Positions 290-59,262 of a stretch of DNA of 64,000 nt are shown here, one piece after another. The number at the start of each line of letters is the position of its first letter. The stretch's first letter is position 1. The stretch spans positions 4,712,001-4,776,000 of the forward strand of contig JAWMAR010000070.1 in NCBI GenBank assembly GCA_036785375.1. Reading direction: 5' to 3'. The stretch comes from Leucoraja ocellata (Eukaryota). The notes below the pieces were generated by a model. That model saw only the letters and a list, made by a program, of their open reading frames with translations. It made no database searches and was not told the DNA's origin. Made by a program: the position numbers and the translations under genes.

Positions 290-329
290 ATGGACTTTGT
301 ATTTCTTTATTTCATGATCACCATTTCGG
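290..329 (+). CDS. Gene A (CD300/pIgR-like receptor) exon 1, signal peptide MDFVFLYFMITIS
   Basis: ATG at 290, hydrophobic 13 codons plus G, then GTAAGT donor (phase 1). It joins in frame to the V exon at 2548 and is 40 nt long, like the gene B leader. Confidence 0.8.
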
Positions 330-456
330 GTAAGTGCCTGCAATTGCTGTTGGCTGCATATCGGTACATGATAATAGATAGATTAGGTTTCAGTGGAATT
401 AAGGATGATTGGGAGAGGTTGGCTTGCCTAATGATAAGATTGTTCACATCAACAGT

Positions 457-728
457 GGGGCGACACGGTGGCGCAGCGGTAGAGTTGCTGCCTTACAGCA
501 CCAGAGATCCGGGTTCAATCCTGACTATGGTTGCGGTCTGTATGGATTTTGTACGTTCTCCTCGTGACTCCAAAGATGTACATATTTATGTCATTTGGCT
601 TGGTATAATTGTAAATTGTCCGTACTGTGTGTAGGATAGCGCCCGTGTGCTTGATTAGCTGGTCGGCGTGGACTCGGTGGGCTGACGAGCCAGTTTCTGC
701 GCTGTATCTCTAAACTAAACTAAACTAA
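457..728 (+). mobile_element. tRNA-derived V-SINE (HE1-like); representative of more than 20 copies on both strands
   Basis: A-box GGTGGCGCAGCGGTAG, B-box GGTTCAATCC, V-domain-like core and (CTAAA)n tail. Other copies at about 5104, 6413, 8377(-), 13109, 20366, 23290, 23797, 29127, 29628, 33065(-), 36671(-), 37254(-), 37748, 41410(-), 48798(-), 49867, 56530(-), 57301(-), 61570(-) and 63375. Confidence 0.85.
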
Positions 729-1906
729 GTTTGCTTGTATGGATGTGAAATCATACAGTCTCCATTATCCAACCTCTCTATCTGCAATGTATATTGTTCA
801 CAGAAGATCAAACATACCCAACTGGATGATCCAATCTGAGTGTCCGACCCCTCTTTGTACTTGTGGGAGGTTGATGCACACAAGTCGGTCCTCTTGCCTC
901 CTACCTTACGATAGTGACTGCATCAAAAATCTCATGATTGTCTGCAAATTGTTTGGAAATTCTCTGACGATGTTTCAAGTCATCCTTGTTTCCTTCTACT
1001 TTGTGCAGCATCTGTTCGTGATAGATTGCTTTGAATTTTCTTTCCAAATAAATAAAGCCATTTTAAGCATTTTAATTCTGAGCACACTTATCCGTTTTCT
1101 ATGCTTTTTAAATTGATTTCGGATTCACTAACTGGGCTGGATGCCAACCCAAACATGTCGCTTATCCTTCTCCACAGATGCTGCCTAACCCGTTGAGTTA
1201 CTCCAGTGCTTCATGTCCTGTTCTGAGCCATATTGTGTCAGTATAAGGATGGTTAGGTGATTGGGGAAAATACAAGTGCAATATGACATGAAGAATTGTG
1301 AAATTATCTATCTTGACATGAAGCAAGGAAGAGCAGGATATTTTTTAAGAGCTGCCAGCGTGGTTACAATTTGGCATTCCTTGCAATCCCGCTGTCCCGT
1401 TTGTGAAACCGTTTCAATTATGTGAGGAGTTCAGGAAGTGAAAAATAAGTACTTAAAGCAATGTATATATATCTTGGGATGAAGTAAGGACAAAATATTT
1501 TATTCAGCATGAAATTATGATCTGCCAGTTTCACATTTAAACAATCAAATGAAACAGGTGTATCTTCCCGAGAGTAGGTGAATTGTGCACCAGAGGACAT
1601 AGGTTTCAGGTCAAGGGGAAAAGATTTAATCTGAATTTGAGGGGTGACTTTTTAATACATAGGGTGGTGGGTGTATGGAACAAGTTGCCAGAGGAGGTAG
1701 TTGAGGCTGGGACTATCCCAACGTTCCAGAAACATAGTCAGGTGCATGGATAGGACATGTTTGGAGGGATATTGCCAAACATGGGCAGTTGGGATTAGTG
1801 TAACTGGGACATTGGGCCAGTGTAGGCAAGTTGGGCCGAAAGGCCTATTTTCATGCTATCACTCCATGCCTATGTTGGGTGAATTAGAATTTGGTGAGAG
1901 TTAGGA

Positions 1907-2220
1907 CATTGGAAAAGCAGCCAACATAACCAAACACTTGTCTCACCCTAGTCATTCCTTTTTCCTGTTCCCATCCAGCAGAACGTACATAAGCTTGAAA
2001 GAATGCATCACCAGACTCAGGAACATCTTTCCCACTGTAATCAAGCTGTAGAACGGTCCTTCCATAAGCTAGGGTACTATCCTATTCACCTCTATCCCAA
2101 TGCAGACATTGTACTTTGTCTATGAAACTGATGCACTACAATGCTTAGAACTATTCTGCACTCTGTATCTTCCCCTTTGCTCTATTTATTGTACCAGTAG
2201 GATGATTGCATTTATGTTAT
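1907..2220 (+). mobile_element. Rex1/Babar-like LINE 3' fragment
   Basis: Degenerate SHP.HS.F...PS.R.Y.SLK..TRL.N coding remnant; similar copies at 28460-28980(-) and 53860-54340(+). Confidence 0.6.
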
Positions 2221-2547
2221 GTTTAGTTTAGTGTAATTTAGTTTAGTTTATTATGGTCACATGTACCGAGATACAGTGAAAAGCTTTTTGTTGCGTGCTA
2301 TCCAGTCAGCCAATAGACTATACATGATTACAATTAAGTCATCCACAGTGTACACATACAGGATAAAGGAAATAACATTTAGTGCTTGGATTGCAGGCAA
2401 AACAAAGCTTTCCACTGTACCATGGTACACTTGACAATAATGGACCTAAACATGGAGCAAATGTTTGAAAGTCCTTTAGTTCTCTAGTTATTAATCTGCC
2501 ACAAATATTATGTTTTAATATGCATTTTATATTTTCACACTGAACAG

Positions 2548-2880
2548 TTACAAATGCTGCTCTAAGTGGACCACGTGCAGTAAATGGAACAGAGGGGCAA
2601 TCAGTCCATATCACATGTACATATAATCGATATTTCAGCCACTTCCCAAAGTACTGGTGCAAAGGCGGTGACTGGATGAGATGTACCATTCTGGTACAAA
2701 CCGTTGGCCATAACAAGACAACGTCTGATGGCAGAATATCCATTACAGATGATACCAAAGTCGGGGAGTTCTCAGTCACCATGGAAAATCTCACCCTGAA
2801 TGATGAAGGGTGGTATTGGTGTGCGATTAGGAGAATTGTCATTGACCTGCGAAGTCGTGTGAAACTTAATATCATTGAAA
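2548..2880 (+). CDS. Gene A exon 2, CD300/pIgR-type V-set Ig domain
   Basis: AACAG acceptor and A|GTAAGG donor, 333 nt, phase 1-1. Translation VTNAALSGP...VHITCTY...KYWCKGGDWMRC...DGRISITDD...FSVTMENLTLNDEGWYWC...VKLNIIE has the B- and F-strand Cys, DxGxYxC, and the extra KYWC-x7-C pair typical of CD300/pIgR/TREM. Confidence 0.93.
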
Positions 2881-3569
2881 GTAAGGCTTGAATATACTTT
2901 TGTAAACGTCAATGCTCTTACATAGTCTGCTGTGTGAATTATTATATAGTTTGCGGTTTACATAGCTTTTAACAGAATTATTATTCTAGAAAGAAATTAA
3001 GATATTTTCTGTTGGAACATTAATTTTTAACTATGTTAATCTTAATTGTAATTTAACCGTTAAATTTTAATTTAATTTAACCTGTAATTTAAGTTTTCAT
3101 TTAATTTAATTTCAGTTCAACAGGAACATGGATAGAATAGGTTTGGAGGGATACGGGCCACCGCAGACAGCTGTGACTAGGGTAGCTGGGACATGTTGTG
3201 GGCAAGTTGGGCCGAAGGGCCTATTACTACGCTGTTTGACTCGTCCATGGCTCTATGGCTCTAATTTAAATGTTAACCTAGTCATTGTACTAGTTTCACT
3301 GCCATCCTGGAGAGTTTCTCTCTGTATAACTCATTTACACCTAGCTCACAGCTATCAATAGCCTGTCTCCTTGATCATCGTTACTGTTTTGCATATCTTT
3401 CATTCATTTGTTCTATATCTCTCTATATCACTGTCTATCTCTCATTTCCCTTTCCCCTGACACTCAGTCTGAAAAAAGGTCTTGACCCGAAATGTCACCT
3501 ATTCATTTTCTCCGGAGATGCTGCCTGACCCCGCTGGGTTACTCCAGCTCTCTGTGTCGATCTTTCTAA

Positions 3570-4437
3570 ACCTCGTCAAAAACCTTGGTGTGATATTTGA
3601 CTCAGCGTAGAAATTTGACAAACAAGTCAATGCTGTGGTAAAAGCTAGCTTCTTCCAGGTTCGGACGATAGCTAAAATAAAACAATTCCTCCATTTTGGC
3701 CTTGAGGTCCAAACGAAACGGCATTTCGTTTGGACCTCAAGGGGTCCAAATGACAATTAAATTGAATCTTGAATCTTGAATTTTGACGACCTCGAAAAGA
3801 TCATCCACACATTTATCTCCTCCTGCCTCAATTACTGCAACTCCCTTTACACTGGCATCAGCCTATCTTCCCTGTCCCGCCTGCAACTGGTCCAAAACGC
3901 CGCAGAGAGACTCCTGACGTGCACACGAAAAAGGGACCACTTCACCCCGATTCTGGCCTCTCTCCACTGGCTCCCTGTGCGGTACCGAATAAATTTCAAG
4001 ATCCTTCTTTATGTTTACAAAGCCCTTAACGGGCTTGCCCCCACCTACATCAAAAGTCTTCTTACCCACCACACCACCTCCAGGTCCCTCAGATCAGCCG
4101 ACTTAGGGTTACTGACCATCCCGCAGTCTAGGCATAAGCTCAGGGGTGACCGCGCCATTGCGGTTGCAGCTCCTAGACTGTGGAACAGCAGCATCCCTCT
4201 TCCCATCAGAACTGCCCCCTCCATCGACTCAAAAGACTCATCGACTTAAAACTTATCTTTACTCTCAAGCCTTTCTTGACGTCCTCTGAGGGAGGGGTAT
4301 ATGTATGTATTTATGTATGTACTTAATCTATGAACCAATGTTGTATAACGTTAGTACCTCCACCAATGTAAAGCACTTTGGTCAACGAGAGTTGTTTTTT
4401 AAATGTGCTACAGAAATAAAAGTGACTTGACTTGACT
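3570..4437 (+). mobile_element. L2 LINE 3' fragment (ORF2 C-terminus and tail)
   Basis: ORF 3776-4249 reads LNYCNSLY...LQLVQNAAERLL...HFTPILASLHWLPVRYRINFKILL...APRLWN; tail GTAAAGCACTTTG...AATAAA(GACTT)n. Confidence 0.9.
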
Positions 4438-4606
4438 TAACTTCATATTAAACCAGCATCTGCAGTTCCTACCTACACAGTACATTTTAACTTTTTGTTT
4501 GTGAACAAATTGATGGGCAAACATGTTATAGACATTTACCTGCACTACTAGCCAGCAGTAATTGACCTCAATTTTAACAAGTCATCATTTACTTTTTCAA
4601 TCACAG

Positions 4607-4631
4607 ATCCGTCAACATCAAAGGATATCTG
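4607..4631 (+). CDS. Gene A exon 3, 25-nt stalk micro-exon (NPSTSKDI)
   Basis: TTTTTCAATCACAG acceptor and TG|GTAAAG donor. Phase 1-2 exactly bridges the V and TM exons, as in genes B and C. Confidence 0.7.
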
Positions 4632-5473
4632 GTAAAGACTAAATCTTTATAAAGTTATATCTTCTGAATACTTACCCTATATCTGCATAGCTATTGTGAT
4701 GAATACTTCTGTACAAGGGGTTATCACTGCTTCTTGGTGGTTTCACTGGTCAATGTTTGTCTAGAAAGTTGGGGGAGAATGTGGAGAATGAAGGATTATT
4801 TATTTACGGTTTCAGAATCAAGGGGAATATTATAGAACATGTAAAAGTGTACAATATGTGGCAGAGAATCAAGATGTTGGATTGCACTTTAGTTCAGATT
4901 AGTGATACAACGTGAAATTGATCCCTTGGCAACAAATGATCACCTGTATCCTTGTTCCATCCTATACCCAGTGGACCATTTACAGAAGTCTGAAGAAGTG
5001 GCCTGGCCCCAAATATTACCCATCTCTGAACTCCAGAGATGCTCCCTGACCCGCTGAGTTACTCCAGCACTTTGTGTCCCCAACAGTCTTGCCCAAGTAA
5101 ATATGGGCAGCACTGTGGCGCAGCGGTAGAGTTGCTGCCTTACACAACCTGGGTTCGATCCTAACTACGGGTGCTGTCTGTACGGAGTTTGTACGTTCTC
5201 CCGTGACCGCGTGGGTTTCCTCCGAGATCTTCAGTTTCCTCCCACACTCCAAAGACGTACAGGTATGTAGGTAAATTGGCTTGGTGTAAATGTAAATTGT
5301 CCCTACTGTGTGTAGGATAGTTAATAAGCGGGGATCATTGGTCGGCGCAGACTCGGTGGGCCGAAGGGCCAGTTTCTGCACGGTATCTATATTGCTACAA
5401 ATAATCGGACGCACATCCACCTGTACTCTTATTAAACGCCTTTGATTAAACTGTTTTGACTCTTTCCTCTTAG

Positions 5474-5570
5474 GAAACATAATACTAACTACAATTTCAT
5501 ATGGAGCATTTTGCGTTGGATATTCTTTGCCATTCTGCTTGTCTGGGGTATCGTGACCACGAGAATGTAG
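5474..5570 (+). CDS. Gene A exon 4, Arg-containing TM and stop (WKHNTNYNFIWSILRWIFFAILLVWGIVTTRM*)
   Basis: TCTTTCCTCTTAG acceptor, hydrophobic helix with an internal Arg, TAG at 5568-5570. The exon continues to a CAG|GTAAGA donor at 5583. Confidence 0.82.
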
Positions 5571-6965
5571 GCAAAGAAAACAGGTAAGATTTATTTTATT
5601 CACCCCTTTCTGCATCTTTAAATGCAACATTGACAACACATTGGAGTAACTCAGCAGGTCAGGCAGCATCTGTGGAGGAGATGGATAGGGGATGTTACAG
5701 GTCAGGACCTTCCTTCAGACAGATGAGGGAACACCTTGCTGGGAATTAAGTTAGTAAGTTCATGTGATGAGAGTAGAATTAGGCCCATTCGGCCCATCAT
5801 GCCTACTCCGCAATTCGATCAAGGCTGATCTATCTCCCCCTCCTAACCACATTCTCCTGCCTTCTCCCCATAACCCGACACCTGGATGTAATAGCAATCT
5901 CTGCAAGGGTAAAGCTGTTGCCTCACAAGCCAGAAACCTGGGATTGATCCTGAGCTCAGGTGCTCTCTGTGTGGAGTTTGCACGTTCTCCCTGTGATTAC
6001 GTGGGTTTTCTCCTGGTGCTCTGATTTCTACCTCCCCCCCCTCATATCCTCAATCTTTCCCTCTTAAACCCATTCTCCTACCTTCTGCCCATTACCCCTG
6101 GCACCTTTTATAACAATTTTTCAGAATTAATAAAAAATTAAGTGTCCTTTCCTCCTTTCCAGTCCATCATGTCAGGCGATAGCAAGGAATATCCAGCAGA
6201 GATTGACAGGTTCTTGATTAGTACAGGGGTCAAAGTCCACGCGGAGAAGGCAAGAGAATGGGGTTGAGAGGGAAAGATAGATTATTCATGACTGAATGGC
6301 AGAGTAGACTCGATGGACCAAATGGCCTAATTCTGCTCCTATAACTTACGAACATAAACTTTCTTTAGGATAAGCCTGCATCTGCAGTTCTTTGTAGTTA
6401 CATATTCCTTGTAGGGTGCCATGGTGACGCAGCGGTAGAGATGCTGCCTCACAGCACCAGAGACCCGGGTTTGATCCTGACTATGGGTGCCGTCCGTACG
6501 GAGTTCGCCCCGTGCGTGACCTGTGTTGGTTTTCTCCGGCAGCTCCGGTTTCCTCCCACACTCCAAAATGCAGGATGATAGACTACTTGTCTTGGTAAAA
6601 TTGTACATTGTCCCTAGTGTGTGTAGGATAGCGTTAGTGCACCGGGATCGCTGGTCGTCACGGACTGGGTGAGCCGAAGGACCTGTTTCTTAGCTGTATG
6701 TCTAATCTAAACCTAAACATACTGCCAAATCGGTAGTTTGCTTCTCTTTTAGACAAGTTCTATCCTACCCACTAGGGACAATGTACGGGAAGTTACAGGT
6801 GACCTGTCGGTTGCCCAACCTGTCGGGGATTCTGGAGTTCTCTGATTTTATTCCTTTTGTTCAGCATGTGTGTATAATGATGATTGCCAAGTACAAATTT
6901 GCAGGACACAAAGACTCAATTCTGTTTTGCAAGATGCAAATTGTCTTTCATTCTTTGCCTTCCAG

Positions 6966-7027
6966 GGCGAGAGTGGTCTGTTACTCTGCACCACTGCCCC
7001 ATAACTCATCAGCTCTTTCAACACTGA
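6966..7027 (+). other. Candidate gene A downstream exon (3' UTR, or relic cytoplasmic exon GREWSVTLHHCPITHQLFQH*)
   Basis: Strong pyrimidine tract TCTTTCATTCTTTGCCTTCCAG followed by non-repeat sequence; open in the phase set by the 5583 donor. Confidence 0.35.
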
Positions 7028-7439
7028 AAACCATCCAGTGAACTGAAGAACAAGGACTATCCTCAATGTATTCCTGTTTATCACATACACACCATCGACT
7101 GGCCGACTGATCTGATGTAAATACTGTGCTCTCAAAGCATTAGTTCCCTTACAAGGACTCTGCTCCCCAATAGAAGGGGAATTTGTTTTCTCCAGTTTTT
7201 AGTTTATTGTCACATGTACCGAGGTATAAGGACATAAGTGATAGGAGCCAAATTATGCCATTCAGCCCATCAAGTCTACTCCGCCATTCAATCATGGCTG
7301 ATCCATCTCTCCCTCCTTACCCCGTTCTCCTGCCTACTCCCCATAACCTCTGACACCGAAGAATCTATCTATCTCTGCCATAAAAACACCCATTAACTTG
7401 ACCTCCACAGCCTTCTGCAGCAAAGTATTACACAGAGTC

Positions 7440-14062: not shown

Positions 14063-14091
14063 GAGGGGAAGTGGAAGTTTACACACAGCTG
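14063..14091 (+). promoter_or_regulatory. Putative gene B proximal promoter: tandem ETS/PU.1-like GGAAGT sites and an E-box
   Basis: GAGGGGAAGTGGAAGT and CAGCTG, about 65-90 nt upstream of the ATG, in non-repeat DNA. Confidence 0.4.
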
Positions 14092-14155: not shown

Positions 14156-14195
14156 ATGGGTCTTACTCTTCTCCTGTCCGTTGTTTTTCTCTCAG
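14156..14195 (+). CDS. Gene B exon 1, signal peptide MGLTLLLSVVFLS
   Basis: GAAATGG Kozak-like start, hydrophobic leader, CAG|GTAAGA donor, phase 1. Confidence 0.85.
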
Positions 14196-18116: not shown

Positions 18117-18452
18117 TGACACACGCCGACATCAATGGGCCGAGCGTGGCAACTGGAATCGTGGGAGGCGTAGTGGAAATCACATGCAAATTCCACAAGC
18201 ATTTCAGCAGCGAACAGAAGTACTGGTGCAAAGGATACTATCGACGAAGCTGCGTGATTTTAGTTCAAACACAGGGCCTTGCGAGGAAAAGCAGAGATGG
18301 CAGAATAACGATAACAGCTGATAATAACAAAGGAGAACTTAAAATCCGAATGGAGGGACTAACAAACGCCGACAAGGGCTGGTATTGGTGTGGAATAGAA
18401 AGGTACCACCTTCTGGACCCATTATATCCTGTGGAGCTTAATGTTCGTGAAG
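18117..18452 (+). CDS. Gene B exon 2, CD300-like V-set Ig domain
   Basis: CTCTCAG acceptor, GAAG|GTAAGA donor, 336 nt. Translation includes VEITCKF...KYWCKGYYRRSC...DGRITIT...MEGLTNADKGWYWCGIER...VELNV (ORF track 18092-18463). Confidence 0.95.
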
Positions 18453-20116: not shown

Positions 20117-20153
20117 CTCAAGCGCTACTTCCTTCGGACAAAGAAAGACTAAG
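20117..20153 (+). CDS. Gene B exon 3, stalk (AQALLPSDKERL)
   Basis: TTTTACCAG acceptor, AAG|GTAAAC donor, 37 nt, phase 1-2. Confidence 0.75.
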
Positions 20154-24284: not shown

Positions 24285-24385
24285 GTTTTTCTTAATAATC
24301 GGACTAGTCTTCGGAATATTAACGATTATGTTTATCGGACTCCTGTTCCTGGTTATCAGAAAAATTAGAAAGAACAAAAATAATG
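24285..24385 (+). CDS. Gene B exon 4, uncharged TM plus basic stop-transfer (RFFLIIGLVFGILTIMFIGLLFLVIRKIRKNKNN)
   Basis: Pyrimidine tract then CAAG acceptor, ATG|GTAAGT donor, phase 2-1; about 24 hydrophobic residues followed by RKIRK. Confidence 0.88.
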
Positions 24386-24577: not shown

Positions 24578-24581
24578 TTCA

Positions 24582-27900: not shown

Positions 27901-30078
27901 TTCCACAGATTCACAACATAGAAACATAGAAACATAGAAATTAGGTGCAGGAGTAGGCCATTCGGCCCTTCGAGCCTGCACCGCCATTCAATATGATCAT
28001 GGCTGATCATCCAACTCAGTATCCCGTACCTGCCTTCTCTCCATACCCCCTGATTCCCTTAGCCACAAGGGCCACATCTAACTCCCTCTTAAATATAGCC
28101 AATGAACTGGCCTCAACTACCCTCTGTGGCAGAGAGTTCCAGAGATTCACCACTCTCTGTGTGAAACAACTCTCTGGGTAAAAAAAAAAAATCCTCATCT
28201 CAATCCTAAATGGTCTACCCCTTATTCGTAAACTGTGACCCCTGGTTCTGGTCTCCCCCAATGGCTTGTTAAATTATATATTGATGTTCTGTTAGGAGTT
28301 AGTTTTTTGTGCCTCTGTTTAGTTTGAGCAGCAAGGTATGTAGATTAGGCAGAAATTACTGTATATTACTACAAAATACCAAAATATCAATTATAAACCC
28401 AAGACACAGTTCAATTCTTTAGATTAAATTATTTCTGTATAAAATTCTCTTTGGTTTATATTTAGGATTATTATTGTCACGTACTGAGGTACAGTGAAAA
28501 GCTTTGGTTTGCATGCTATCCAACCAGATCACATAATACTACACATAAATACAATCGTCAAACATAAGTACCATAGGTAGAGCAAAGGAGAAGATACAGT
28601 GCAGAATATAGTTCTCAGCATTGTAGAGCATCAGTTTCAGAGGCAAAGTCCAATGTCTGCAATGGGGGAAGAGGCGAATCGAACAGTACCTTAGCTTAAG
28701 GAAGCTACCATTCAAAAGGCTAATAAAAGAGGAAAAGAAGCTGTTGCTGAGTCTGGTGATGCGCCCCTTCAGGCTTCTGTATCTTTTGCCTGACGGGAGC
28801 AGGGAAAAAAAAGAATGACCAGGGTGGGACAAGACTTTGATTATGTTGGTTGCTTTTCCGAGGCAGCGTGAAGTGTAGATGGAGTCAATGGTGGGGAGTC
28901 TGGGCTACATCTACAACTCTCTGCGATTTTCTGCCGTCTTAGGCAGGGCTGTTCCCAAACTAAGCTGGGACGCAAGCTAACAGTATGCTTTCTACGTTGC
29001 ATCATGTTAAGTAAATAGGAGAGTGTGTCTAAGCACAGCAAACGACAAGGGAAGTCATTGTTGAGTAACAGATCTCATCCTGCCCAATTAACACAAATGA
29101 TCCGAAACAACTTTCAACTAATCTGACAGCATGGTGGCGCAGCGGTAGAGTTGCTGCCTTACAGCAACAGAGACCCGGGTTACATCCTGACTACAGGTGC
29201 TGTAGTTTGTACGTTATCCCTGTGACCTGCGTGCGTTTTCTCCGGGTGCTCCGCCGGTTTCCTCCCACACTCCAAAGACGTATAAATTTGTAGGGTATTT
29301 GGCTTGGTATAATTGTAAATTGCCCCTAATGTGTAGGATAGTGTTAGTGTACGGGGATCGCTAGTCGGCGTGGACACAGTGGGCAGAAGGACGTGTTTCC
29401 GCGCTGTATCTCTAAAACTAAAACTGAAAAACTAATCAGCATCACACCTGGATGATAATTGTTGATCTGACTCTATCTTTAAAGCTCGGCCTTTGCATTT
29501 AATTGTTCACAGGTGCGAGTGAACGTGTGGATGGCTGTAAAGTGGAATTTAAAGGAATGCAGGAGATTGAAGGTGAAGGGACAGGTGAGTGGGCCAAGTT
29601 TATAAAAAGACCAGGAAATCTTAGTATTACACAGTGGCGCAGTGGTAGAGTTGCTGCCTCGCACCACAAGAGACCAAGGTCCGATCCCGACTACGGGTGC
29701 TGTCTGTAAGGAGTCAGTACATTCTCCCGGTGTCTGTGAGGGTTTTCTCTGGGTGCTCCGGTTTCCTCCAACATCCCAAAAATGTACAGGTTTGTAAGTT
29801 AATTGGCTTACGTAAATTGTAAATGGCCCCGAATGCGCTCGGTGGTGCTAGTTTACGGGTTGATCAATAGTCAGCGCGGACTCGGTGGGTCGAAGGGCCT
29901 GTTTCCACACCGTGTCACTCTATGACTCTTTATTAACACAGCATCTATTTAGGTTTTTCTTTTAACATTTGGGTATGCATGCTAAAAAAAAACCAGTGCA
30001 TTTTAGAAATTACATTTGACAAAAAATGTTTTAAATGTTTTCGATTGGCACGACTTAATATCTTTGTGTTTTTTTTAG

Positions 30079-30134
30079 ATAAGAAGGAAGGCGACTCAAC
30101 AATAGAGAACTCCGTCCCGAAGTCGAACTCTATG
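30079..30134 (+). CDS. Gene B exon 5, cytoplasmic (DKKEGDSTIENSVPKSNSM)
   Basis: T-rich TTTTTTAG acceptor, ATG|GTAAGG donor, 56 nt, phase 1-0; same length and phase as gene C exon 5. Confidence 0.8.
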
Positions 30135-35869: not shown

Positions 35870-36061
35870 TTGGCCAAAGAGATGGAAGCCGGAGTTACCT
35901 ACGCCACCGTAGCAATCCAGCAGAGCAACAACCACCAGGAAGACTCCACCATGTACGATAACGTCAACCCCCCCAAGGTTCAAGAAGAGAAAAAGCCGCC
36001 GGTTACCGAGCCTCCAAACGCAGAACCGTTAGAGTATTCGACAATTGCATTCAAAAAGTAA
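35870..36061 (+). CDS. Gene B exon 6, ITIM/ITSM-bearing tail and stop
   Basis: CCGCAG acceptor; translation LAKEMEAGVTYATVAIQQSNNHQEDSTMYDNVNPPKVQEEKKPPVTEPPNAEPLEYSTIAFKK*, containing VTYATV, TMYDNV and LEYSTI. Confidence 0.88.
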   Translation: MAKEMEAGVTYATVAIQQSNNHQEDSTMYDNVNPPKVQEEKKPPVTEPPNAEPLEYSTIAFKK

Positions 36062-40723: not shown

Positions 40724-40772
40724 ATGAAATATATTCATTTTACTCTGTTCCTGACCACCTTTTCATTGGCAG
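40724..40772 (+). CDS. Gene C exon 1, signal peptide MKYIHFTLFLTTFSLA
   Basis: ATCATGA start, hydrophobic leader, CAG|GTAAGC donor, phase 1. Confidence 0.82.
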
Positions 40773-44229: not shown

Positions 44230-44550
44230 CTGCATTAACTGGGCCGAAGCTAGTGTCCGGGACCTTGGGAGGAGCCGTTACCATAAGATGCCAGTATCAT
44301 GCATATTACAAGTATCATGAAAAGTACTGGTGCAAGGGTTCTGATTGGAAATCCTGCAGTGTTCTGGTCAATTCTGCAAGCCAACATAAAAACATTGATG
44401 ATAGAATAAGAATGGTGGACAACCAAACTGCTGGAGAATTTATCACTAAAGTGACCCAACTCTCTGCCAACGACACTGGGCTTTACTGGTGCGGCATTGT
44501 GCAACTCGGCTATGACAGAATGGTTCCAGTGCGACTGAATGTTACAGAAG
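44230..44550 (+). CDS. Gene C exon 2, CD300-like V-set Ig domain
   Basis: CTTACAG acceptor, GAAG|GTAAGA donor, 321 nt. Translation includes VTIRCQY...EKYWCKGSDWKSC...RIRMVDNQTAGEF...QLSANDTGLYWCGI...VRLNV. Confidence 0.95.
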
Positions 44551-48642: not shown

Positions 48643-48709
48643 ATCCAACAACACAACCACCTACAATATCTCCTGAACTTCAGGAAACAGCTCATCACGG
48701 AAATCAAAG
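48643..48709 (+). CDS. Gene C exon 3, Thr/Pro-rich stalk (DPTTQPPTISPELQETAHHGNQ)
   Basis: TTGTTTTTCAG acceptor, AAG|GTAACA donor, 67 nt, phase 1-2. Confidence 0.8.
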
Positions 48710-51503: not shown

Positions 51504-51574
51504 CCCCATGTGACTTGTGTATGTACCTGGTGTTGGGTATATAGTTAGTGTCTGGGGGTCTGCATCCCGCAAAC

Positions 51575-52200: not shown

Positions 52201-52302
52201 GATCTAACAGAAATGGGAATAGAAAATTGAAAACCGTAAGAAACAACAAGTATGAAAATTGGCTTGGGATAATTAACTTTTGCTTTTATTTTATTCCCAC
52301 AG

Positions 52303-52406
52303 TTCCGTAAATATATCCATTCTTCTGGGAAGCATATTTGGAGTTTTGATTGTTTTGATTGTTACTGCTGTTTTTGTCATAAAATGCAGGAAATATTCCG
52401 CAGCGG
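52303..52406 (+). CDS. Gene C exon 4, uncharged TM (SSVNISILLGSIFGVLIVLIVTAVFVIKCRKYSAA)
   Basis: TTTTATTCCCACAG acceptor, CGG|GTAAGT donor, phase 2-1. Confidence 0.88.
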
Positions 52407-52766
52407 GTAAGTGACGCAACTTTAAACATTCCATTAGTACATGAGAAAACTTTCTACATCCAGTGGATGAGCTGAAGAGGGAAATGTGGAATTCTCCAGA
52501 AATCTCTCCCATTCCTTCAGTTCTAACCCTACAATAGTCGAGAGTGTTTTATTGTCATATGTCCCAGATAGAACAATGAAATTCTTACTGCAGCACAACA
52601 GAATATGTATTCATAATAAATAATATAACAAAAACTCAGAAAAAAACCCCCAACAATAACAGTGCAATAATAATAATAATAGTCTATTGTAGTTCAGAGT
52701 GTATGAGGTTGTAGTGTTTAATAGCCTGATGGCTGCAGGGAAGAAGCTGTTCCTGAACCTGGACGT

Positions 52767-52767
<1 letters not shown>

Positions 52768-52798
<31 letters not shown>

Positions 52799-53745
52799 AT
52801 TTTATTTTTGGGCGCCTTTCAGAAATCTCAAGGACACCTCACAGAGATTAACAGGAATAAAAAACGTATAATCAGAATAAAATAAATAATAAAGACATCA
52901 CAGAAACACAAATTAAAAACAGAATTCAATCCAAAAACAAAAAATCAAAAACACAATGTGAAAAAGAGAGCAGTGGCAGCTAACGCGCGCCAGCGTCCAC
53001 TCTCCCTTCCGACAGCCATCTTGGACAAAGACTAACAGGATTACTTACAGACAACAAAAAAATCATCCCCTCACAATGGATACCACTGTGGGGGAAGGCA
53101 CAATGTCCAGTCCCCAACCCCAAGTTCACCCAAAGTCAGGCCTATTGAGGCCACCGCAATTGCCTCTACGGAGGCCCGATGTTCCTGGCCGTTCTCACCA
53201 GGTGATCTTGCCCCAGCGTTGGGAGAGTTCTCTCAGCGGCTGGGCCACTTGGAATGGCCGCTTCCTAGCTGGAGACCGCGGCTTCCGAAGCCGACAAGGC
53301 CGCGCCGGCCTGGAGCTCCCAGGCTCCCGATGTTGAAATCGGCGCCGCCCGCTCCGCTCTGCAGACCCGCAGCCCGGAGGTGTCGAACACGGCGGACACA
53401 GCTCACCGGAGCTCCAGCACGGCGACCCAGGCAAGGCATCGCCCGCTCCGCGACAGCGCCCCAGCGCTGCGCCACCACAGAGGCCGAGGTGCTGGGCGGT
53501 CTCCGCCAGGAAACGGCGCTCCAAGCCTGCTGGTAGGCCACGAGGACGGTCGACGGGCAGCCCGGAGAAAAAGCTGCCTCATCGACCAGGTAGGGACCTA
53601 GAAGTAAAATTGCCTCAAACCCCCCACATTAAGAAGTCAATTTCTCCAACGGACGAAACACAGGACTTACTAAAAACCTTTTTTAAAAAAAGCAAAGTAA
53701 ACGGACGGCTGCTGGTTAGCAGCCGCTCCCCAAGATGGCTCCTCA
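52768..53745 (-). mobile_element. GC-rich non-autonomous retroelement (family copy) with a third tail type
   Basis: Same body; the minus-strand tail reads GAGGTGTCCTTGAG...GAAAGGCGCCC-AAATAAAATG(TAT)n. Confidence 0.7.
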
Positions 53746-55027
53746 CATTCCCAAGTTCTAGTTATAGTTCTCAGGCTCCTGTACCTTCTTCCTGATGGCA
53801 GTGGTGAGATGGCCAGGATGGTGTGGGTCTTTGATGTAGTTGGCTGTCTTTTTGATGACGATAGATCAGACGATAGTGCCCTGGCGAGGAAAAGACTACA
53901 AAAAGTAGGAAACACTGCCCAGTCCATCATCGGCTCTGACCTCCCTGCCATCGAGGGGATCTATCGCAGTCGGTGCCTCAAAAAGGCTGGCAGTATCATC
54001 AAGGACCCACACCATCCTGGCCACACACTCATCTCCCTGATACCTACAGGTAGAAGGTACAGGAGCATGAAGACTGCAACAACCAGGTTCATGAATAGCT
54101 ACTTCCGCACAGCAATCAGGCTATTAAACCTGGCTCGGACATAACTCTGAACATTAATAGCCCATTATCTGTTATTTGCACTTGATCAGTTTATTCATTC
54201 ATGTGTGTATATATTTATATAATGGTATATGGACACACTTGTAGTCAATGCCTACTATGTTCTGTTGTGCTGAAGCAAAGCAAGAATTTAATTGTCCTAT
54301 CAGGGACACATGACAATAAACTCACTTGAACTTGAACTAGATTCCTTTGATGGTGAGCAACTCCAAGCAAATTCACACCCCTGTGTACAGTTGCAAATTT
54401 GATTTGAAGGGACCACAAAAATACTCCAGGAACATTTACATCAAAAAGATACAAAATAAAGCTCCATCCATCCATGTGCTTGTGAGGTATACCTGAATTA
54501 TCAAAATTATATATTATGTATTAACAAAATCCTAATTCCACTTCTAAAAATAGATGCTAAAACAAAGGAAAAGAAACAGAAAAAGAGCACACTATCAAAC
54601 ATTACTTTGGAGTTGTTTAAAATGTGGAAAAAATGGCAACAAATGGGATTTTTAGTTTAGTTTACAGATACGACATGGTACACCAAATCCATACCGACTA
54701 TTGATCACTCACTCACGCTAGTTCTACATTATCCCACATTTACGTCCATTCCCTACACACCAGGGGCAATTTTACAAAGGCCAAATATCATAAAAGCTTT
54801 TTATTGTACCTCGGCACATGTGGCAGTAAACCAAACTTAAGAAACTAAACTCGACTACAAACACCGCATGTTTTTTGGGATAGACAATAGGTGCAGGAGT
54901 AGGCCATTCAGCCCTTTAAGCCAGCACCACCATTCACTGTGATCATGGTTGATCATCCACAATCAGTACCCCGTTCCTGCCTTCTCCCCATATCCCTTGT
55001 CTCCGCTATCTTTAAGAGCTCTATCTA

Positions 55028-55301
55028 AGGGTCGATTTTCTCGCCGACTGCCGGCATCATTGACTGACATATCAGGTCACAGAAAAATACGCGGCATGAT
55101 GATGTATGACACGGTGATGATGCGGTGTGATGACATATGACACGGTGGTGACTCGGCGTGATGGCATATGACGCGCGCTGTTTTTTCAAGTGTCGCAACA
55201 TTTTTTTTGTCGCCGCTGGATTTTGAAATGTTCTAAATCTTTTGGCGACCCTGATATGACGCCGGCAGTCGGCGAAAAAATCGCCAAGTGGGACAGGCCC
55301 T
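55028..55301. mobile_element. MITE family 2 inserted at TA in a CR1 tail (left TIR partly deleted)
   Basis: Host sequence CTATC-TA-ACTCTC is split as CTATCTA|AGGG...GGCCCT|TAACTCTC. Confidence 0.8.
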
Positions 55302-55825
55302 TAACTCTCTCTTGAAAGCCTCCAGAGAATTGGCCTCCGCTGCCTCCTGAAGCAGAGATTCCACAGATTCACAACTCTCTGGGTTAAAACATTTTTCCTC
55401 ATCTCCATTCTAAATGGCCTACCCCTTATATTTAAAATGTGGCCCCTGGTTCTGGACTCCTCCAACATCTGGAACATGTTTCCTGCCTCTAGTGTGTCCA
55501 ATCCCTTAATAATCTTCCATGTTTCAATAAGATACCCTCTCATCCTTCTAAAGTTTAGGGAGGAAACGGGAGCACCCGGAGAAAACCCACACGGTCACGG
55601 GGAAAACATGCAAACTGATGTGTTAACACTCAGATTATTTGTGTTTTCAATAAAATTAGGACATGGATCATGTGGGGCAAATAGTAATCAATTCACCTTG
55701 GCTAACGACCTCATATATCCTCAAGCCAAGTTAAGAGTATTTCATTATCAAATATATTGAAAACAGAACAATGAAATTCTCGCATGCAGCAGCTTAACAG
55801 ACCCTTCAGAGAGAACAGGGAAAGC

Positions 55826-55980
55826 CTAAGTTACTTGTCTCATCCGACAGCATCTCCAACAATAATTCAGTGCTTGAGTTCCACGCTGAATGGTTAGACA
55901 CGATCTTTGTGTTCGACTCATATGGCAGTGGGATTTGAACCCCCCCAACCTCTGGCTCACAGTGTCACCAGCTGACACCT
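55826..55980 (+). mobile_element. Ancient Deu-domain SINE relic (SacSINE1/AmnSINE1-like); others at about 32930-33020 and 61950-62235
   Basis: GTCTCATCCGACAGCATCTCC...GTGGGATTTGAACCC...AACCTCTGGCTCA resembles the Deu-SINE 3' region as I recall it. Confidence 0.45.
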
Positions 55981-56991
55981 GCAGGAATCTATGGAGAGGC
56001 TGCACTCGAGACGAACAATGAATAAGAATATGCCCTGACACTACAGACTCGAATCGAGCAATAGACAGAGAACAATATACAATGCTGTACATACAAGACA
56101 CAAGTATGCACAAGGACAGTAACATAACGTTCCAATCATAGGAGTGATAAAATAGGTCCTGTGTGTGTGACATTCATTCAAGTCCATCCTCCATCACCAC
56201 AGTATGGTTCAATTATTCATTTACTGAATTATTAAATCAGTACCAAGAGCAAGAGGAGCCATTTTGGTGTTTTCAGGTGGATTAAAGACAGGCTGACATT
56301 TAAAAAAAAATAGCAATCCTACAGTGACACATGATGTGCTTGGATGTGTTTTAAAGGGACATCTTCTGAGATATAATGTTTTCTTGCTGTTTAGTTTAGT
56401 TTAGAGATACAGCGTAGAAACAGGCCCATAAGCCCACCGAGTCCAACCAGCGTACACTAGTTCTATCCCACACACAAGGGACAATTTACAGAAGTCAATT
56501 AACCTACAAACATGCACATCTTTGGAGTTTGGTTTAGTTTAGTTTAATTTAGTTTAGTTTGGAGATACAGCGTCGAAACAGGCCCTTTCGTCCCACCGAG
56601 TCCTCACCAACCAGCGACCACCCCCTACACTAGTTCTATCCTACACACAAGGGACAATTTCCAGAAGCCAATTAACGTACAAACCTGCACGTCTTTGGAG
56701 TGTGGCAGGAAACCAGAGCACCCGGAGAAAATCCACGCAGGTCACGGGCAGAACGTGCTAACTCCGTACAGACAGCACCCGTAATGAGGATTGAACCCGT
56801 GTCTCCGGCGCTGTAAAGCAGCAACTCTACCACTGCACCACTGTGCTGCTTTAAAGTAATAAATTACCTTTCAGTCGACTTGCTTATTGCAAATGTCAAA
56901 ACACACTGCAGACAACTATTCATTAAAATATGTACTGCAACGGATTAATTTGTAGGCATATTACTGCAATCTATTTCTTTATCATCCTTAG

Positions 56992-57047
56992 GGAAGAAAG
57001 GAATTGGTCACAAAGAGGAAGAATATAATGCTGTCTGCAATTCTGTG
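56992..57047 (+). CDS. Gene C exon 5, cytoplasmic (GKKGIGHKEEEYNAVCNSV)
   Basis: CATCCTTAG acceptor, GTG|GTAAGG donor; 56 nt, phase 1-0, with xKK...NS[MV] ends matching gene B exon 5. Confidence 0.8.
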
Positions 57048-59124
57048 GTAAGGAATTCTCATCTGATGTCTGTCTGATCATTAATAGAATGTGTCTCTAT
57101 GCTATCGCTTGGATATTTATTTATGCGGTGTATTCTATACAATATTGTTCCACATAATCCACTAAACGCCAAGTACAATCTGGGCGCATGTGAGTGCCCA
57201 AGGGTTATGGGGATCAGATGGAGTTGGTGTATAAGATTAAAAATACAGATCACAGAACAGTACAGCACAGGAACAGGCCCTTCGGCCCACAATGTCTGCA
57301 GTTTAGTTTAGTTTATTTTAAAGATACAGTGTAGAAACAGGCACTTCGGCCCACCGAGTCCGCGCCGACCAGCAATCCCCGCACACTTACACTATCCGAC
57401 ACACACCAGGGACAATTTACAATTTCACGAAGCCCATTAGCGTACAAACCTGTACGACTGTGGAGTGCTGGAGGAAACCGTAGCTCCCAGAGATAACCCA
57501 CGCAGGTCACAGGGAGAACGTACAAACTCCATACAGACAGCACCCGTAGTCAGGATCGAACCCGGGTCATAGGCACTGTAAGGCAGCAAATCTACCGCTG
57601 CGCCACCGTGCCGCCCCTGTGCTGACAATGATAGTGAGACTAACCCCTTTCTGCCCGCACATAATCAGTATCCCTGCATATCCATGTGCTTGTCCAAGTG
57701 TCTCTTAAATGCCACTTTCATAATCTGCCTCCACCACCATCACACACAGCTGTGCAAACCAGTCACCCACCACCCTCTATGTGTAAAAAAAAAAGTAAAC
57801 TTGGGCCTTACATGTCCTTTAAACATTGCCCCAAACACCTTAAAGCTATGCTCTCCAGTCTGGGGAAAAAGGTTTCTGGCTGTCTCCCCTCTCAATGCCG
57901 CTCATAGTTTTATATAGGTCTCCCCTCAACCTTCGGCATTCCAGAGAACACATGGCAGATCTGTCGTAAAGAGGCAGATCATCTCCTTAGCTTCTACTTG
58001 TTGTTATCTTATGATGAGCATGGTTCAGTTACAACATGTGACAGGGTCATCTTCATATATTCACATTATAACAGAAGTACAATATAGTCCTGTTTTAATC
58101 TAAATATATGCACAGAGTCTCTTGCCCAGAGTGGGTGAATTTGTGGCCCAGAGGACATAGGTTTAAGGTGATGGGAATCTGAGGGGTAACTATTGAAGTA
58201 GACTATTATTATTATTGCACTATATTTGTTTATTTATTGAGTGTGTGTGTATGTGTGTATATATACATACTGAAGTTTTTTTTTTCTCCCATTATGTACT
58301 ATGTTTCCATATTCTGTTGTGCTGCAGCAAGTAAGAATTTCATTGTCCTATCTGGGACATATGACAATAAAACACTCTTGACTCGTGAACTTTTTTAAAC
58401 GACATGTCGGCTGGTGTGGACAAACTGGGCTGAAGAGCCTGTTTCCACACTGTATCACACTATGACTATATAAAGATGGCTCGTTGGCAAATTGTAACTG
58501 AACCATGCTAATCATTTAAAAAAAAAACATAAAGTACAATATCGTCCTTCAGCTAACCCATTTCATTTATTGTTCCAATTAAATCAATAGACAATAGGTG
58601 CAGGAGTAGGCCATTCGGCCCTTCGAGCCAGCACCGCCATTCAATGTGATCATGGCTGATCATCCCCAATTAGTACCCCGTTCCTGCCTCCTCCCCATAT
58701 CCCCTGACTTCGCTATTTTTAAGAGCCCTATCTAGCTCTCTCTTGAAAGCATCCAGAGAACCTGCCTCTACCACCCTCTGAGGCAGAGAATTCCACAGAC
58801 TCCGTTACGTCTCCGTTCTAAATGGCTTACTCCTTATTCTTGAACTGTGGCCCCTGGTTCTGGACTCCCCGAACATCGGGAACATGTTTCCTGCCTCTAG
58901 CGTGTCCAAGCCCTTAACAATCTTATATGTTTCAATGAGATACCCTCTCATCCTTCTAAACTCCACAGTGTACAAGCCCATGATTATAACAAGAATTAAA
59001 AGAGAGCCATATTCAGCATTCTGTGGTGGAATCAATAATCAATAAAAGATTTAAATTTGTTTTGGCTTAAAGATCGACGGATGACATACTGTTTAACAAT
59101 AACATTTTGACCTTCTTTTGAAAG

Positions 59125-59262
59125 TCTTCCAGAGATGACGAAGAAGGTAAATTAAGTGACACGACCACGGATAAATCCAGCACTCAGACACAAGAAACCT
59201 TCCGCGATATTCATCAGACACCAGACCACGAAGAGAAGGAGAATCTCTCATGCCAGAATTGA
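59125..59262 (+). CDS. Gene C putative terminal exon (SSRDDEEGKLSDTTTDKSSTQTQETFRDIHQTPDHEEKENLSCQN*)
   Basis: CCTTCTTTTGAAAG acceptor, open phase-0 frame in unique sequence, loose similarity to gene B exon 6. An alternative AG at 59131-59132 and a possible donor after 59146 leave the boundaries uncertain. Confidence 0.6.
   Translation, partial: SSRDDEEGKLSDTTTDKSSTQTQETFRDIHQTPDHEEKENLSCQN

What the first reader, a model, noticed from the sequence alone, without database searches (positions are those of the whole stretch)
290..59262. Three-gene CD300/pIgR-like receptor cluster with activating, inhibitory and tyrosine-poor members in a cartilaginous fish
Seen: three tandem same-strand genes with identical intron phases (1, 1, 2, 1, and 0 where present) and V domains carrying the KYWC-x7-C second disulfide. 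Spliced ORFs are about 164, 253 and 244 aa. Established: mammalian CD300 clusters pair charged-TM activating receptors with ITIM-bearing inhibitory ones, and related MDIR receptors are described in skate. Inferred: this is a complete paired-receptor innate immune module with a third, possibly decoy, member. The ORF track hides it because many exons are only 25-104 nt long.
Basis: partly seen in the sequence, partly recalled or inferred. Interest (0 to 1): 0.85.

Follow-up and report, generated by a model that had tools for sequence, protein, structure and literature searches.

The report
Skate CD300-like (MDIR) receptor gene trio
Three neighbouring skate genes each encode a small immune-type surface receptor with one antibody-like domain (one built to activate, one to inhibit, one with neither signature); they are real, but belong to a receptor family already described and annotated in skates.

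Summary
Three same-strand genes lie at 290-5570, 14156-36061 and 40724-59262. Each has a leader exon, one pIgR/CD300-type V exon with the KYWC-x7-C motif, a short stalk exon and a TM exon. All 14 coding introns are GT-AG, the phases are 1,1,2,1,0, and the products are 164, 253 (277 with a cassette) and 244 aa. Gene A has an Arg in the TM and a 4-residue tail. Gene B carries VTYATV, TMYDNV and LEYSTI. Gene C has an uncharged TM and no ITIM.

It is not new. Gene A is the orthologue of a deposited clearnose-skate MDIR cDNA (ABC86795.1, 164 aa). All three have RefSeq models in Amblyraja radiata (164, 277 and 241 aa), and there are imperfect ones in Leucoraja erinacea.

"Complete paired module" is overstated: the V domains are only 37-46% identical, and each gene has shark or ray relatives of the same build (clade support only for B). 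A near-identical four-V relative of gene C exists. Unchecked notes of this scan place many more such genes nearby, so the scan found this before on other DNA. "Decoy" has no support. Spliced models were searched exon by exon only.

The parts
290..329 (+). Gene A exon 1: ATG and signal peptide (MDFVFLYFMITIS), phase-1 donor
   Evidence: 12/13 identical to P0158 and to P0159. The X1 contig piece 218-329 ends at this donor.
2548..2880 (+). Gene A V-set exon (333 nt) with KYWC-x7-C
   Evidence: Pfam V-set E 1.2e-18. CLM-1/CD300f 76 bits. 105/110 identical to P0158. X1 and X5 contig pieces stop at 2547 and 2880.
4607..4631 (+). Gene A stalk micro-exon, 25 nt (N)PSTSKDI(W)
   Evidence: tblastn. AG/GT and phases 1 to 2. 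7/7 identical to P0158. X1 depth is 1.82 in bin 4601-4800.
5474..5570 (+). Gene A TM exon: FIWSILRWIFFAILLVWGIV with Arg, tail TTRM, TAG at 5568-5570
   Evidence: 30/31 identical to P0158. The W..[LM]RW motif is present in 6 of 7 homologues.
5571..5583 (+). 13 nt between gene A's stop and a GT donor (5584-5585) that appears to be used; the 3'-UTR exon was not located
   Evidence: Sequence. X1 record 8 (347 nt) lies on 5473-5584, with 211 further letters lying elsewhere.
14156..14195 (+). Gene B exon 1: ATG and signal peptide (MGLTLLLSVVFLS)
   Evidence: 13/13 identical to P0171 and to P0170.
18117..18452 (+). Gene B V-set exon (336 nt)
   Evidence: Pfam V-set E 1.3e-12. CLM-1 62.5 bits against the best pIgR domain at 48.7. 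108/111 identical to P0171.
20117..20153 (+). Gene B stalk exon (37 nt)
   Evidence: 11/11 identical to P0171; AG/GT.
24285..24385 (+). Gene B TM exon (101 nt), uncharged TM plus basic anchor
   Evidence: 33/33 identical to P0171.
29513..29584 (+).
   Evidence: 23/23 identical to P0171. Present in 7 of 7 skate B sequences and in Pristis X1, absent from Pristis X2 and from the 253-aa shark proteins.
30079..30134 (+). Gene B cytoplasmic exon (56 nt)
   Evidence: 18/18 identical to P0171.
35870..36061 (+). Gene B last coding exon: VTYATV (ITIM), TMYDNV (ITSM-like), LEYSTI (ITIM), TAA
   Evidence: 63/63 identical to P0171. VTYA[TA]V is present in 15 of 15 B-type proteins.
40724..40772 (+). Gene C exon 1: ATG and signal peptide (MKYIHFTLFLTTFSLA)
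   Evidence: 16/16 identical to P0151 and 15/16 to P0190.
44230..44550 (+). Gene C V-set exon (321 nt), the only V exon between leader and stalk
   Evidence: Pfam V-set E 3.8e-13. CLM-1 76.6 bits. 105/106 identical to domain 1 of P0151. No other V hit in 40.7-48.6 kb.
48643..48709 (+). Gene C Pro/Thr-rich stalk exon (67 nt)
   Evidence: 21/21 identical to P0151.
52303..52406 (+). Gene C TM exon (104 nt), uncharged
   Evidence: 34/34 identical to P0151.
56992..57047 (+). Gene C cytoplasmic exon 1 (56 nt) with EEEYNAV
   Evidence: 18/18 identical to P0151. YNAV/YNPV is present in 7 of 7 skate C-type sequences.
59125..59262 (+). Gene C last coding exon: acidic, Ser/Thr-rich, no Tyr, TGA
   Evidence: 45/45 identical to P0151 and 42/45 to P0190.

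Best explanation
The window holds three separate, tandem, same-strand genes for single-V type I membrane receptors of the CD300 (CMRF35-like)/pIgR-type. In skates this family was published as MDIR. The source is probably Leucoraja erinacea or a very close relative.

Shown:
- the exon structures and the V fold family;
- the second Cys pair;
- the TM and tail motifs;
- relatives of the same build in skates, rays and sharks.

Inferred for gene A: the TM arginine and 4-residue tail mean that it signals only through an acidic-TM, ITAM-bearing adaptor, so it is an activating receptor.

Inferred for gene B: after tyrosine phosphorylation its two ITIMs and one ITSM-like motif recruit SH2 phosphatases, so it is an inhibitory receptor. 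It has a 72-nt cassette that lengthens the membrane-proximal tail.

Inferred for gene C: it has an uncharged TM, a Pro/Thr stalk and an acidic Ser/Thr-rich tail with one conserved YNAV (YxxPhi / YxN). It is more likely a trafficking or adaptor-coupled receptor than an inert decoy.

A and B look like an old activating/inhibitory paralogue pair. In Heptranchias their products are 51% identical across leader, V and stalk. C is a separate lineage in which the number of V exons varies.
For: V identity:
- Pfam V-set in 3 of 3 V exons.
- Among single-domain solved chains the best match is always CLM-1/CD300f, at 76, 62.5 and 76.6 bits. pIgR D1 (1xed) scores 51.8, 39.2 and 38.6.
- Per-domain pIgR scores for the B V exon are at most 48.7 bits.

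Gene structure: 14 of 14 coding introns are GT-AG, the phases are conserved, and the lengths are 164, 253/277 and 244 aa.

Orthologues:
- A matches P0158 (A. radiata XP_032898780, 164 aa), P0159 (R. eglanteria MDIR ABC86795.1, 164 aa), and 171-175-aa proteins in Heptranchias, Heterodontus and Narcine.
- B matches 253-aa proteins in 5 shark and ray species and 277-aa proteins in skates.
- C matches P0190 (A. radiata, 241 aa) and P0202 (Rhinoraja, 242 aa).

RNA:
- Run X1 covers gene A's exon bins only, with 0 depth in bins 801-1000 and 4801-5000.
- X1 contig pieces end at 329, 2547, 2880, 5473 and 5584, within 1 nt of five predicted exon boundaries.
- The unplaced remainders are 29, 30 and 24 letters, which fit the neighbouring exons.
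- Four Logan contigs of 965-1276 nt carry complete 277-aa B ORFs whose exons span 21.9 kb here.

Motifs: the TM Arg is in 6 of 7 A homologues, VTYA[TA]V is in 15 of 15 B proteins, and there is no canonical ITIM in 13 of 14 C-type tails.

Tree: a B clade at 96/99 holds 10 of 10 B rows, and the skate A clade is at 99/98. The A-B relation is shown.
Against: - No function was tested, and ligands, adaptors and phosphatase binding are inference from motifs.
- The tool only guesses that X1 and X5 are RNA, and the unplaced contig letters were not shown. The gene A junctions are therefore consistent with the model, not read letter by letter.
- The one raw-read RNA run laid (X15) had 0 depth on all gene A exons.
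- No RNA evidence is specific to gene C. The Logan ORFs P0189, P0199 and P0201 carry the V type of P0151 domains 2-4, not the window's.
- Monophyly of the A lineage is not resolved on V domains alone. It needs 3 changes, although starred branches force only 1.
- A catshark Gnomon model (P0155, 745 aa) joins a B-type gene to a C-type gene.
- A 2014 survey reported no FcRgamma homologue in shark genomes (PMC4016189, passages). The adaptor for A is therefore unidentified.
Confidence: 0.85

Rival explanations
1. The three V exons belong to one multi-domain pIgR-like gene, and the small exons between them are not used as modelled.
For: Multi-V proteins of this family exist: P0151 has 4 V, P0003 has 3 V and P0010 has 2 V. 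The catshark model P0155 runs a B-type gene into a C-type gene.
Against: - Each V has its own ATG/leader exon, TM exon and stop codon.
- Single-V orthologues of matching length exist for all three genes.
- X1 contig boundaries tie gene A's own exons together.
- Logan contigs carry complete B ORFs.
- The three V types are only 37-46% identical. Tandem V domains inside real multi-V proteins of this family are near-identical.
Confidence: 0.03
2. Gene A is a decaying copy of an inhibitory receptor. On this reading the in-frame TAG, 13 nt before a conserved donor, is a disabling mutation, so the 'activating' member is a pseudogene.
For: The stop lies just before a phase-conserved donor. The raw RNA run X15 shows no reads on its exons.
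Against: - The same end (..TTRM..TVRM..TARM..VKLKI..TVKM) and the TM Arg are kept in 6 of 7 homologues from skates, an electric ray and two sharks.
- V identity to A. radiata is 105/110.
- X1 holds exon-only contigs.
- A stop 13 nt before the last junction is too close to trigger nonsense-mediated decay (the roughly 50-nt rule, recalled).
- No relic cytoplasmic exon was found downstream.
Confidence: 0.05
3. Gene B is the elasmobranch counterpart of mammalian TMIGD3 rather than of any CD300 gene, so the cluster is not a CD300 locus homologue.
For: - With the catshark B orthologue as query, the 16 non-elasmobranch hits among the 25 listed were all mammalian, and all TMIGD3 or ADORA3-TMIGD3 fusion proteins. 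No CD300 was listed.
- One shark B orthologue is named TMIGD3-like.
- B-type V domains score higher against 7 TMIGD3 V domains (means 60-73 bits) than A-type (50-60) or C-type (45-53).
Against: - That search sees only proteins sharing 5-residue words within a length band.
- CLM-1 scores about the same against the B V exon (62.5 bits).
- In the tree TMIGD3 joins at an unresolved base with no affinity for B.
- Atlas neighbours are CMRF35-like and pIgR-like clusters.
- Only the V domain aligns, covering 34-50% of the query.
- No curated CD300 sequences could be put in the tree.
Confidence: 0.15
4. Gene C is a signalling-dead decoy that only competes for ligand.
For: It has no ITIM and no charged TM residue. 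Its last exon has no tyrosine, whereas ray and shark relatives have them (for example Mobula LCYIHET against skate TFRDIHQT).
Against: The 72-residue tail is 59/63 identical over its two cytoplasmic exons (17/18 and 42/45) between this window and A. radiata. YNAV/YNPV is kept in 7 of 7 skate sequences. A decoy tail would be free to drift or be lost.
Confidence: 0.1

Closest known systems
Skate MDIR (modular domain immune-type receptors; Cannon et al. 2006, Immunogenetics 58:362, PMID 16738934)
   Same: Gene A matches the deposited R. eglanteria MDIR protein ABC86795.1 exon by exon (12/13, 94/110, 4/7, 24/31) and has the same 164-aa length. [quoted passage not shown]
   Different: It is a different skate species. 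B and C were not compared with MDIR2-4 (ABC86796, ABC86797 and ABC86799), because those sequences were not retrieved. The original paper is not held, so I saw only its reference line, and which MDIR number ABC86795.1 carries is not known to me.
Mammalian CD300/CMRF35-like family (CD300a, c, f and others)
   Same: - A single V domain with the extra C-C' disulfide.
- CD300f is the best single-domain match among solved structures for all three V exons.
- The same three architectures occur: charged TM with a short tail, an ITIM/ITSM tail, and neither. The last resembles CD300g, which is recalled and not tested.
   Different: Identity is only in the range of distant relatives (62-77 bits). Orthology and synteny with the 17q25 cluster are untested. 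Mammalian activating/inhibitory pairs such as CD300a/c have much more similar ectodomains (recalled) than A/B here (46%). Lipid ligands are untested.
Polymeric immunoglobulin receptor (pIgR)
   Same: The V-domain type is the same. Full-length pIgR chains are the top PDB hits because four or five domains add up. The gene C relative P0151 has four tandem V domains and is named 'pIgR-like' by RefSeq.
   Different: The window genes have one V each. Per-domain scores are lower than to CD300f: pIgR D1 scores 34.5 bits and D4 48.7 bits against 62.5. No ligand or transcytosis evidence exists. Reviews state that pIgR is absent from cartilaginous fishes (PMC4016189 and PMC13337447, passages).
RefSeq models in Amblyraja radiata and Leucoraja erinacea
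   Same: A. radiata XP_032898780 (164 aa), XP_032898782 (277 aa) and XP_032898783 (241 aa) match A, B and C in length and sequence, and their accessions are near-consecutive. L. erinacea XP_055510913 and XP_055511095 match A and B.
   Different: - The L. erinacea model of A starts at an upstream ATG (197 aa) that is out of frame in this window.
- Its model of B lacks the leader exon (271 aa, starting inside the intron).
- A few residues differ, so the window is another individual, haplotype or very close species.

Membership tests
CD300/CMRF35-like receptors | Single V-set Ig domain with a second (C-C') disulfide, KYWC-x7-C | tested here: met
   Pfam V-set in 3 of 3 V exons. The motif is read in all three. 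That this Cys pair forms the C-C' disulfide is recalled from CD300/pIgR D1 structures.
CD300/CMRF35-like receptors | V domain closer to CD300 than to other V-set families | tested here: met
   CLM-1/CD300f scores 76, 62.5 and 76.6 bits. By comparison, for the A, B and C V exons, pIgR D1 (1xed) scores 51.8/39.2/38.6 and NKp44 42.4/31.3/40.5. TREM2 scores about 30 and TIM-3 about 31.5 against the A V exon.
CD300/CMRF35-like receptors | Orthologous genomic position (synteny with the CD300 cluster) | not testable with these tools
CD300/CMRF35-like receptors | Lipid (PS/PE/ceramide) ligand binding | not testable with these tools
   This needs binding assays. The feature itself is recalled.
Skate MDIR family | Orthology to a deposited MDIR cDNA product | tested here: met
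   Gene A against ABC86795.1 (P0159) gives 83% over the V exon, the same 164 aa and all four exons aligned. B and C were not tested against MDIR2-4.
Activating receptors that use TM-charge adaptors | Basic residue inside the TM helix plus a very short tail | tested here: met
   FIWSILRWIFFAILLVWGIV followed by TTRM and the stop. Conserved in 6 of 7 homologues. Adaptor pairing itself was not tested.
ITIM-bearing inhibitory receptors | (I/V/L/S)xYxx(I/V/L) in the cytoplasmic tail | tested here: met
   Gene B has VTYATV and LEYSTI plus TMYDNV (TxYxxV). VTYA[TA]V is present in 15 of 15 B-type proteins. Phosphatase recruitment was not tested.
Paired receptors in the strict sense | Activating and inhibitory members with near-identical ectodomains | tested here: not met
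   A-B V identity is 46%. In Heptranchias, A against B is 51% over leader, V and stalk.
pIgR | Two or more tandem V domains in one chain | tested here: not met
   There is one V exon per gene in the window. The relative P0151 does have four.
pIgR | Binding and transcytosis of polymeric Ig | not testable with these tools
TMIGD3 | V domain specifically related to TMIGD3, and linkage to ADORA3 | tested here: inconclusive
   B-type V domains score highest against TMIGD3 V (means 60-73 bits), and the 16 non-elasmobranch hits were all mammalian TMIGD3 or ADORA3-fusion proteins. The tree gives no supported grouping, and linkage could not be examined.

The most novel reading that the evidence does not exclude
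Gene C and its near-identical four-V relative (P0151) may be the cartilaginous-fish working counterpart of pIgR/CD300g. This would be a V-domain receptor with an uncharged TM, a mucin-like stalk and a sorting-type tail (YNAV plus an acidic Ser/Thr cluster). It would carry polymeric IgM or other cargo across epithelia or endothelia. V-exon number would be tuned by recent tandem exon duplication. That would answer the question, still posed in a 2026 review (PMC13337447, passages), of how cartilaginous fishes move immunoglobulin into secretions without a recognised pIgR.
Probability: 0.07. Interest if true: 0.8.

Novelty: already known. Interest (0 to 1): 0.2.

Why it matters
It matters little as a discovery. 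The family (MDIR, CD300-like) was published in a skate in 2006, and the orthologues are in RefSeq.

It has modest value as annotation:
- The window gives clean models where the Leucoraja RefSeq models look imperfect. A is 164 aa, not 197, and B has a proper leader and is 277 aa, not 271.
- It shows a 72-nt cassette in the inhibitory member.
- It shows a stop codon 13 nt before a donor that appears to be used in the activating member.
- It suggests that the A/B activating-inhibitory pair and the C lineage predate the shark-ray split.

The surveys that report no pIgR-type genes in cartilaginous fishes (PMC4016189, PMC13337447) do not mention these pIgR-type V receptors in the passages I read.

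Tried and rejected
- Relic cytoplasmic exons after gene A's TM exon. tblastn and blastn of B and C tail exons against 5571-14100 gave only chance or repeat hits. The 3'-UTR exon of A was not located.
- The sibling note that gene C's last exon is gene B's ITIM exon with the tyrosines erased. BLASTP found no alignment at E <= 100. Tyrosine loss is seen only against C-type relatives in rays and sharks.
- TMIGD3 orthology of B remains inconclusive.
- A V-domain tree with curated mammalian CD300, PIGR, FCMR and TREM anchors was not done.
- In the tree, domain hits covering under 70 profile positions were dropped. Only 7 of the 16 TMIGD3/ADORA3 hits were used. P0001, P0152, P0169 and P0192-P0202 were left out.
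- Synteny could not be examined.
- Pfam on four retroelement-like ORFs found 0 families.
- Papers. The MDIR paper and a 2010 review are not held. Searches for MDIR with skate and CD300 terms found only PMC3031540 that concerns this receptor family. Supplements were not asked for, and they may hold MDIR sequence tables.
- Whether gene C and P0151 are one locus with a different V-exon number or two recent paralogues was not resolved.

Full report
**What is there**

The window has no N. A six-frame scan for YWC finds three V-like open stretches, all on the + strand, at about 2.5, 18.1 and 44.2 kb. Pfam V-set matches them at E 1.2e-18, 1.3e-12 and 3.8e-13. Each carries KYWC, seven residues and a Cys.

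Against solved structures, full-length pIgR chains come first only because several domains add up. Among single-domain chains CLM-1/CD300f is best for all three, at 76, 62.5 and 76.6 bits. It is ahead of CD300c and CD300a, pIgR D1 (51.8, 39.2 and 38.6) and NKp44, and for the A V exon also ahead of TREM2 and TIM-3. For the B V exon the per-domain pIgR scores are 34.5 (D1), 48.7 (D4) and 46.8 (D5). A phmmer pass over 1.84 billion representatives found 2624 proteins at E <= 0.001.

**Gene models**

I mapped stored orthologous proteins onto the window with tblastn and read the splice sites.

- Gene A: 290-329, 2548-2880, 4607-4631, 5474-5570.
- Gene B: 14156-14195, 18117-18452, 20117-20153, 24285-24385, 29513-29584, 30079-30134, 35870-36061.
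- Gene C: 40724-40772, 44230-44550, 48643-48709, 52303-52406, 56992-57047, 59125-59262.

All 14 coding introns are AG...GT. The phases are 1,1,2 (A), 1,1,2,1,1,0 (B) and 1,1,2,1,0 (C). The summed coding lengths give 164 aa, 277 aa (253 without the 72-nt exon) and 244 aa. It is absent from Pristis X2 and from the 253-aa shark proteins.

**Transcript evidence**

- In run X1, which the tool guesses to be RNA, depth is confined to repeats and to gene A's exon bins. Bins 801-1000 and 4801-5000 have 0 depth.
- X1 contig pieces end at 329, 2547, 2880, 5473 and 5584, each within 1 nt of a predicted exon boundary. The 1-nt offsets fall on a G that fits either side.
- The unplaced remainders of 29, 30 and 24 letters are what the neighbouring exons would supply. 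I could not see those letters, so this is agreement with the model, not proof.
- X5 holds one more piece ending at 2880.
- X2's share came from repeats only.
- The raw-read RNA run X15 had 0 depth on every gene A exon, so the gene is silent or rare in that sample.
- X1 record 8 runs to 5584 and then has 211 letters elsewhere. The donor 13 nt after the TAG therefore seems to be used, and the stop lies in a non-terminal exon.
- For gene B, four Logan contigs of 965-1276 nt carry complete 277-aa ORFs. Here those exons are spread over 21.9 kb, so the contigs must be spliced. P0171 matches 269 of 272 residues exon by exon.
- For gene C no RNA evidence is specific. The Logan ORFs P0189, P0199 and P0201 share its non-V exons at 100% but carry the V type of P0151 domains 2-4.

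**Identity of the genes**

- Gene A. The V exon is 105/110 identical to A. radiata 'CMRF35-like molecule 7' (XP_032898780, 164 aa) and 94/110 identical to the Rostroraja eglanteria 'modular domain immune-type receptor' ABC86795.1 (164 aa). Proteins of 171-175 aa exist in Heptranchias, Heterodontus and Narcine.
- Gene B. It matches A. radiata XP_032898782 (277 aa), Rhinoraja XP_078277144 (277 aa) and L. erinacea XP_055511095 (271 aa). It also matches 252-253-aa proteins in Carcharodon, Heptranchias, Rhincodon, Pristiophorus and Pristis.
- Gene C. It matches A. radiata XP_032898783 (241 aa) and Rhinoraja XP_078277145 (242 aa).
- Species. The non-V exons of gene C are 134/134 identical to L. erinacea XP_055510909 (P0151). 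That protein has four tandem V domains where the window has one. Gene A and B products differ from the L. erinacea RefSeq proteins at one and four residues. The window is therefore L. erinacea or something very close to it.
- RefSeq model quality. The L. erinacea model of A (197 aa) starts at an upstream ATG that is out of frame here. Its model of B starts inside the intron before the V exon.

**Relations among the three**

V identities are A-B 46%, A-C 42% and B-C 37%. In Heptranchias the A and B products are 51% identical over leader, V and stalk.

A maximum-likelihood tree of 47 V domains gives these results:
- A starred B clade (96/99) holds 10 of 10 B rows.
- A skate A clade is supported at 99/98.
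- The shark A rows sit beside B with weak support (81/95).
- C-type rows form two groups.
- The window's C V domain is sister to domain 1 of P0151 (97/88).
- A-lineage monophyly is not resolved.

Near-consecutive RefSeq accessions in A. radiata (A, B, C), Rhinoraja (B, C) and Heptranchias (B, A), and a catshark model that fuses a B-type gene with a C-type gene (P0155), suggest conserved adjacency. This is indirect evidence. So A and B look like an old activating/inhibitory paralogue pair, and C is a separate lineage. They are not a recently diversified pair with a shared binding face.

**Mechanism (inferred from motifs)**

- A has Arg in the outer third of its TM helix and the tail TTRM, both kept in 6 of 7 homologues. 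By analogy with receptors that assemble with acidic-TM ITAM adaptors (recalled), it should be activating. The adaptor is unknown.
- B has VTYATV, TMYDNV and LEYSTI. The first is present in 15 of 15 B-type proteins. It should be inhibitory.
- C has no ITIM and no charged TM residue. It keeps YNAV/YNPV in 7 of 7 skate sequences, and its acidic Ser/Thr-rich tail is almost unchanged in A. radiata. That argues against a decoy and for sorting or adaptor binding.

**Context and novelty**

[quoted passage not shown] The original paper (PMID 16738934) is not held, and I saw only its reference line.

Unchecked notes of this scan report tandem Ig exons about 5 kb beyond the window's end, and many CD300/pIgR/MDIR-like clusters from about 0.8 Mb before the window to about 0.17 Mb after it. 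The trio is therefore a slice of a large region, and the scan noted the same kind of thing before on other DNA.

Two papers state that pIgR-type genes are absent from cartilaginous fishes (PMC4016189 and PMC13337447, passages). This leaves a small opening for the bold reading about gene C and its four-V relative.

**Verdict**

This is a real and well-read gene trio. It belongs to a family, and corresponds to genes, that are already described and annotated. Interest is low.

Noticed in passing
window 29513-29584: A 72-nt phase-1/phase-1 cassette exon in gene B, encoding ASERVDGCKVEFKGMQEIEGEGT with one Cys and no Tyr. It is included in 7 of 7 skate sequences, skipped in Pristis X2, and absent from the shark proteins.
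   Followed up: yes
window 190-329: The L. erinacea RefSeq model of gene A (P0192, 197 aa) starts at an ATG at about 190. In this window that ATG is in another frame than the ATG at 290 (two tblastn pieces in different frames). The X1 contig on 218-329 shows one gap. This points to an indel polymorphism in the 5' region.
   Followed up: partly
window 40724-48709 versus protein P0151: Gene C has one V exon. L. erinacea XP_055510909 has four near-identical V domains but identical leader, stalk, TM and tail exons. This is either a very recent paralogue just beyond the window or a V-exon copy-number difference.
   Followed up: partly
window 24505-24577: ARAGORN calls a tRNA-Lys(UUU) 120 nt after gene B's TM exon. 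It is probably the head of a tRNA-derived SINE, as a sibling first-stage note says.
   Followed up: partly
window 5001-5400, 1601-1800, 4401-4600: Extremely abundant repeats lie in gene A's introns. Summed contig depth reaches 408291 in X2 at 5001-5200, with many back-joints between about 5078 and about 4449.
   Followed up: no
proteins P0155 and P0008 (not in the window): Gnomon models in Scyliorhinus torazame (745 aa) and Heptranchias perlo (635 aa) fuse neighbouring receptor genes of this family. They indicate adjacency of B- and C-type genes in sharks, and they are a warning about automatic 'pIgR-like' models.
   Followed up: partly
window 62777-63148 (-), 45115-45399 (-), 30517-30903 (-): Repeated ORF fragments share the string ...LGLYSLE.RRLRGDL.E..K... 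They look like pieces of one retroelement family. Pfam found no family for the two tested (62777-63148 and 30517-30903).
   Followed up: partly
(B-type V domains): Mammalian TMIGD3 (and ADORA3-TMIGD3 fusion) V domains are the nearest mammalian hits returned for the B lineage and share KYWCRGY..(x)C. A possible B-TMIGD3 relation is unresolved.
   Followed up: partly
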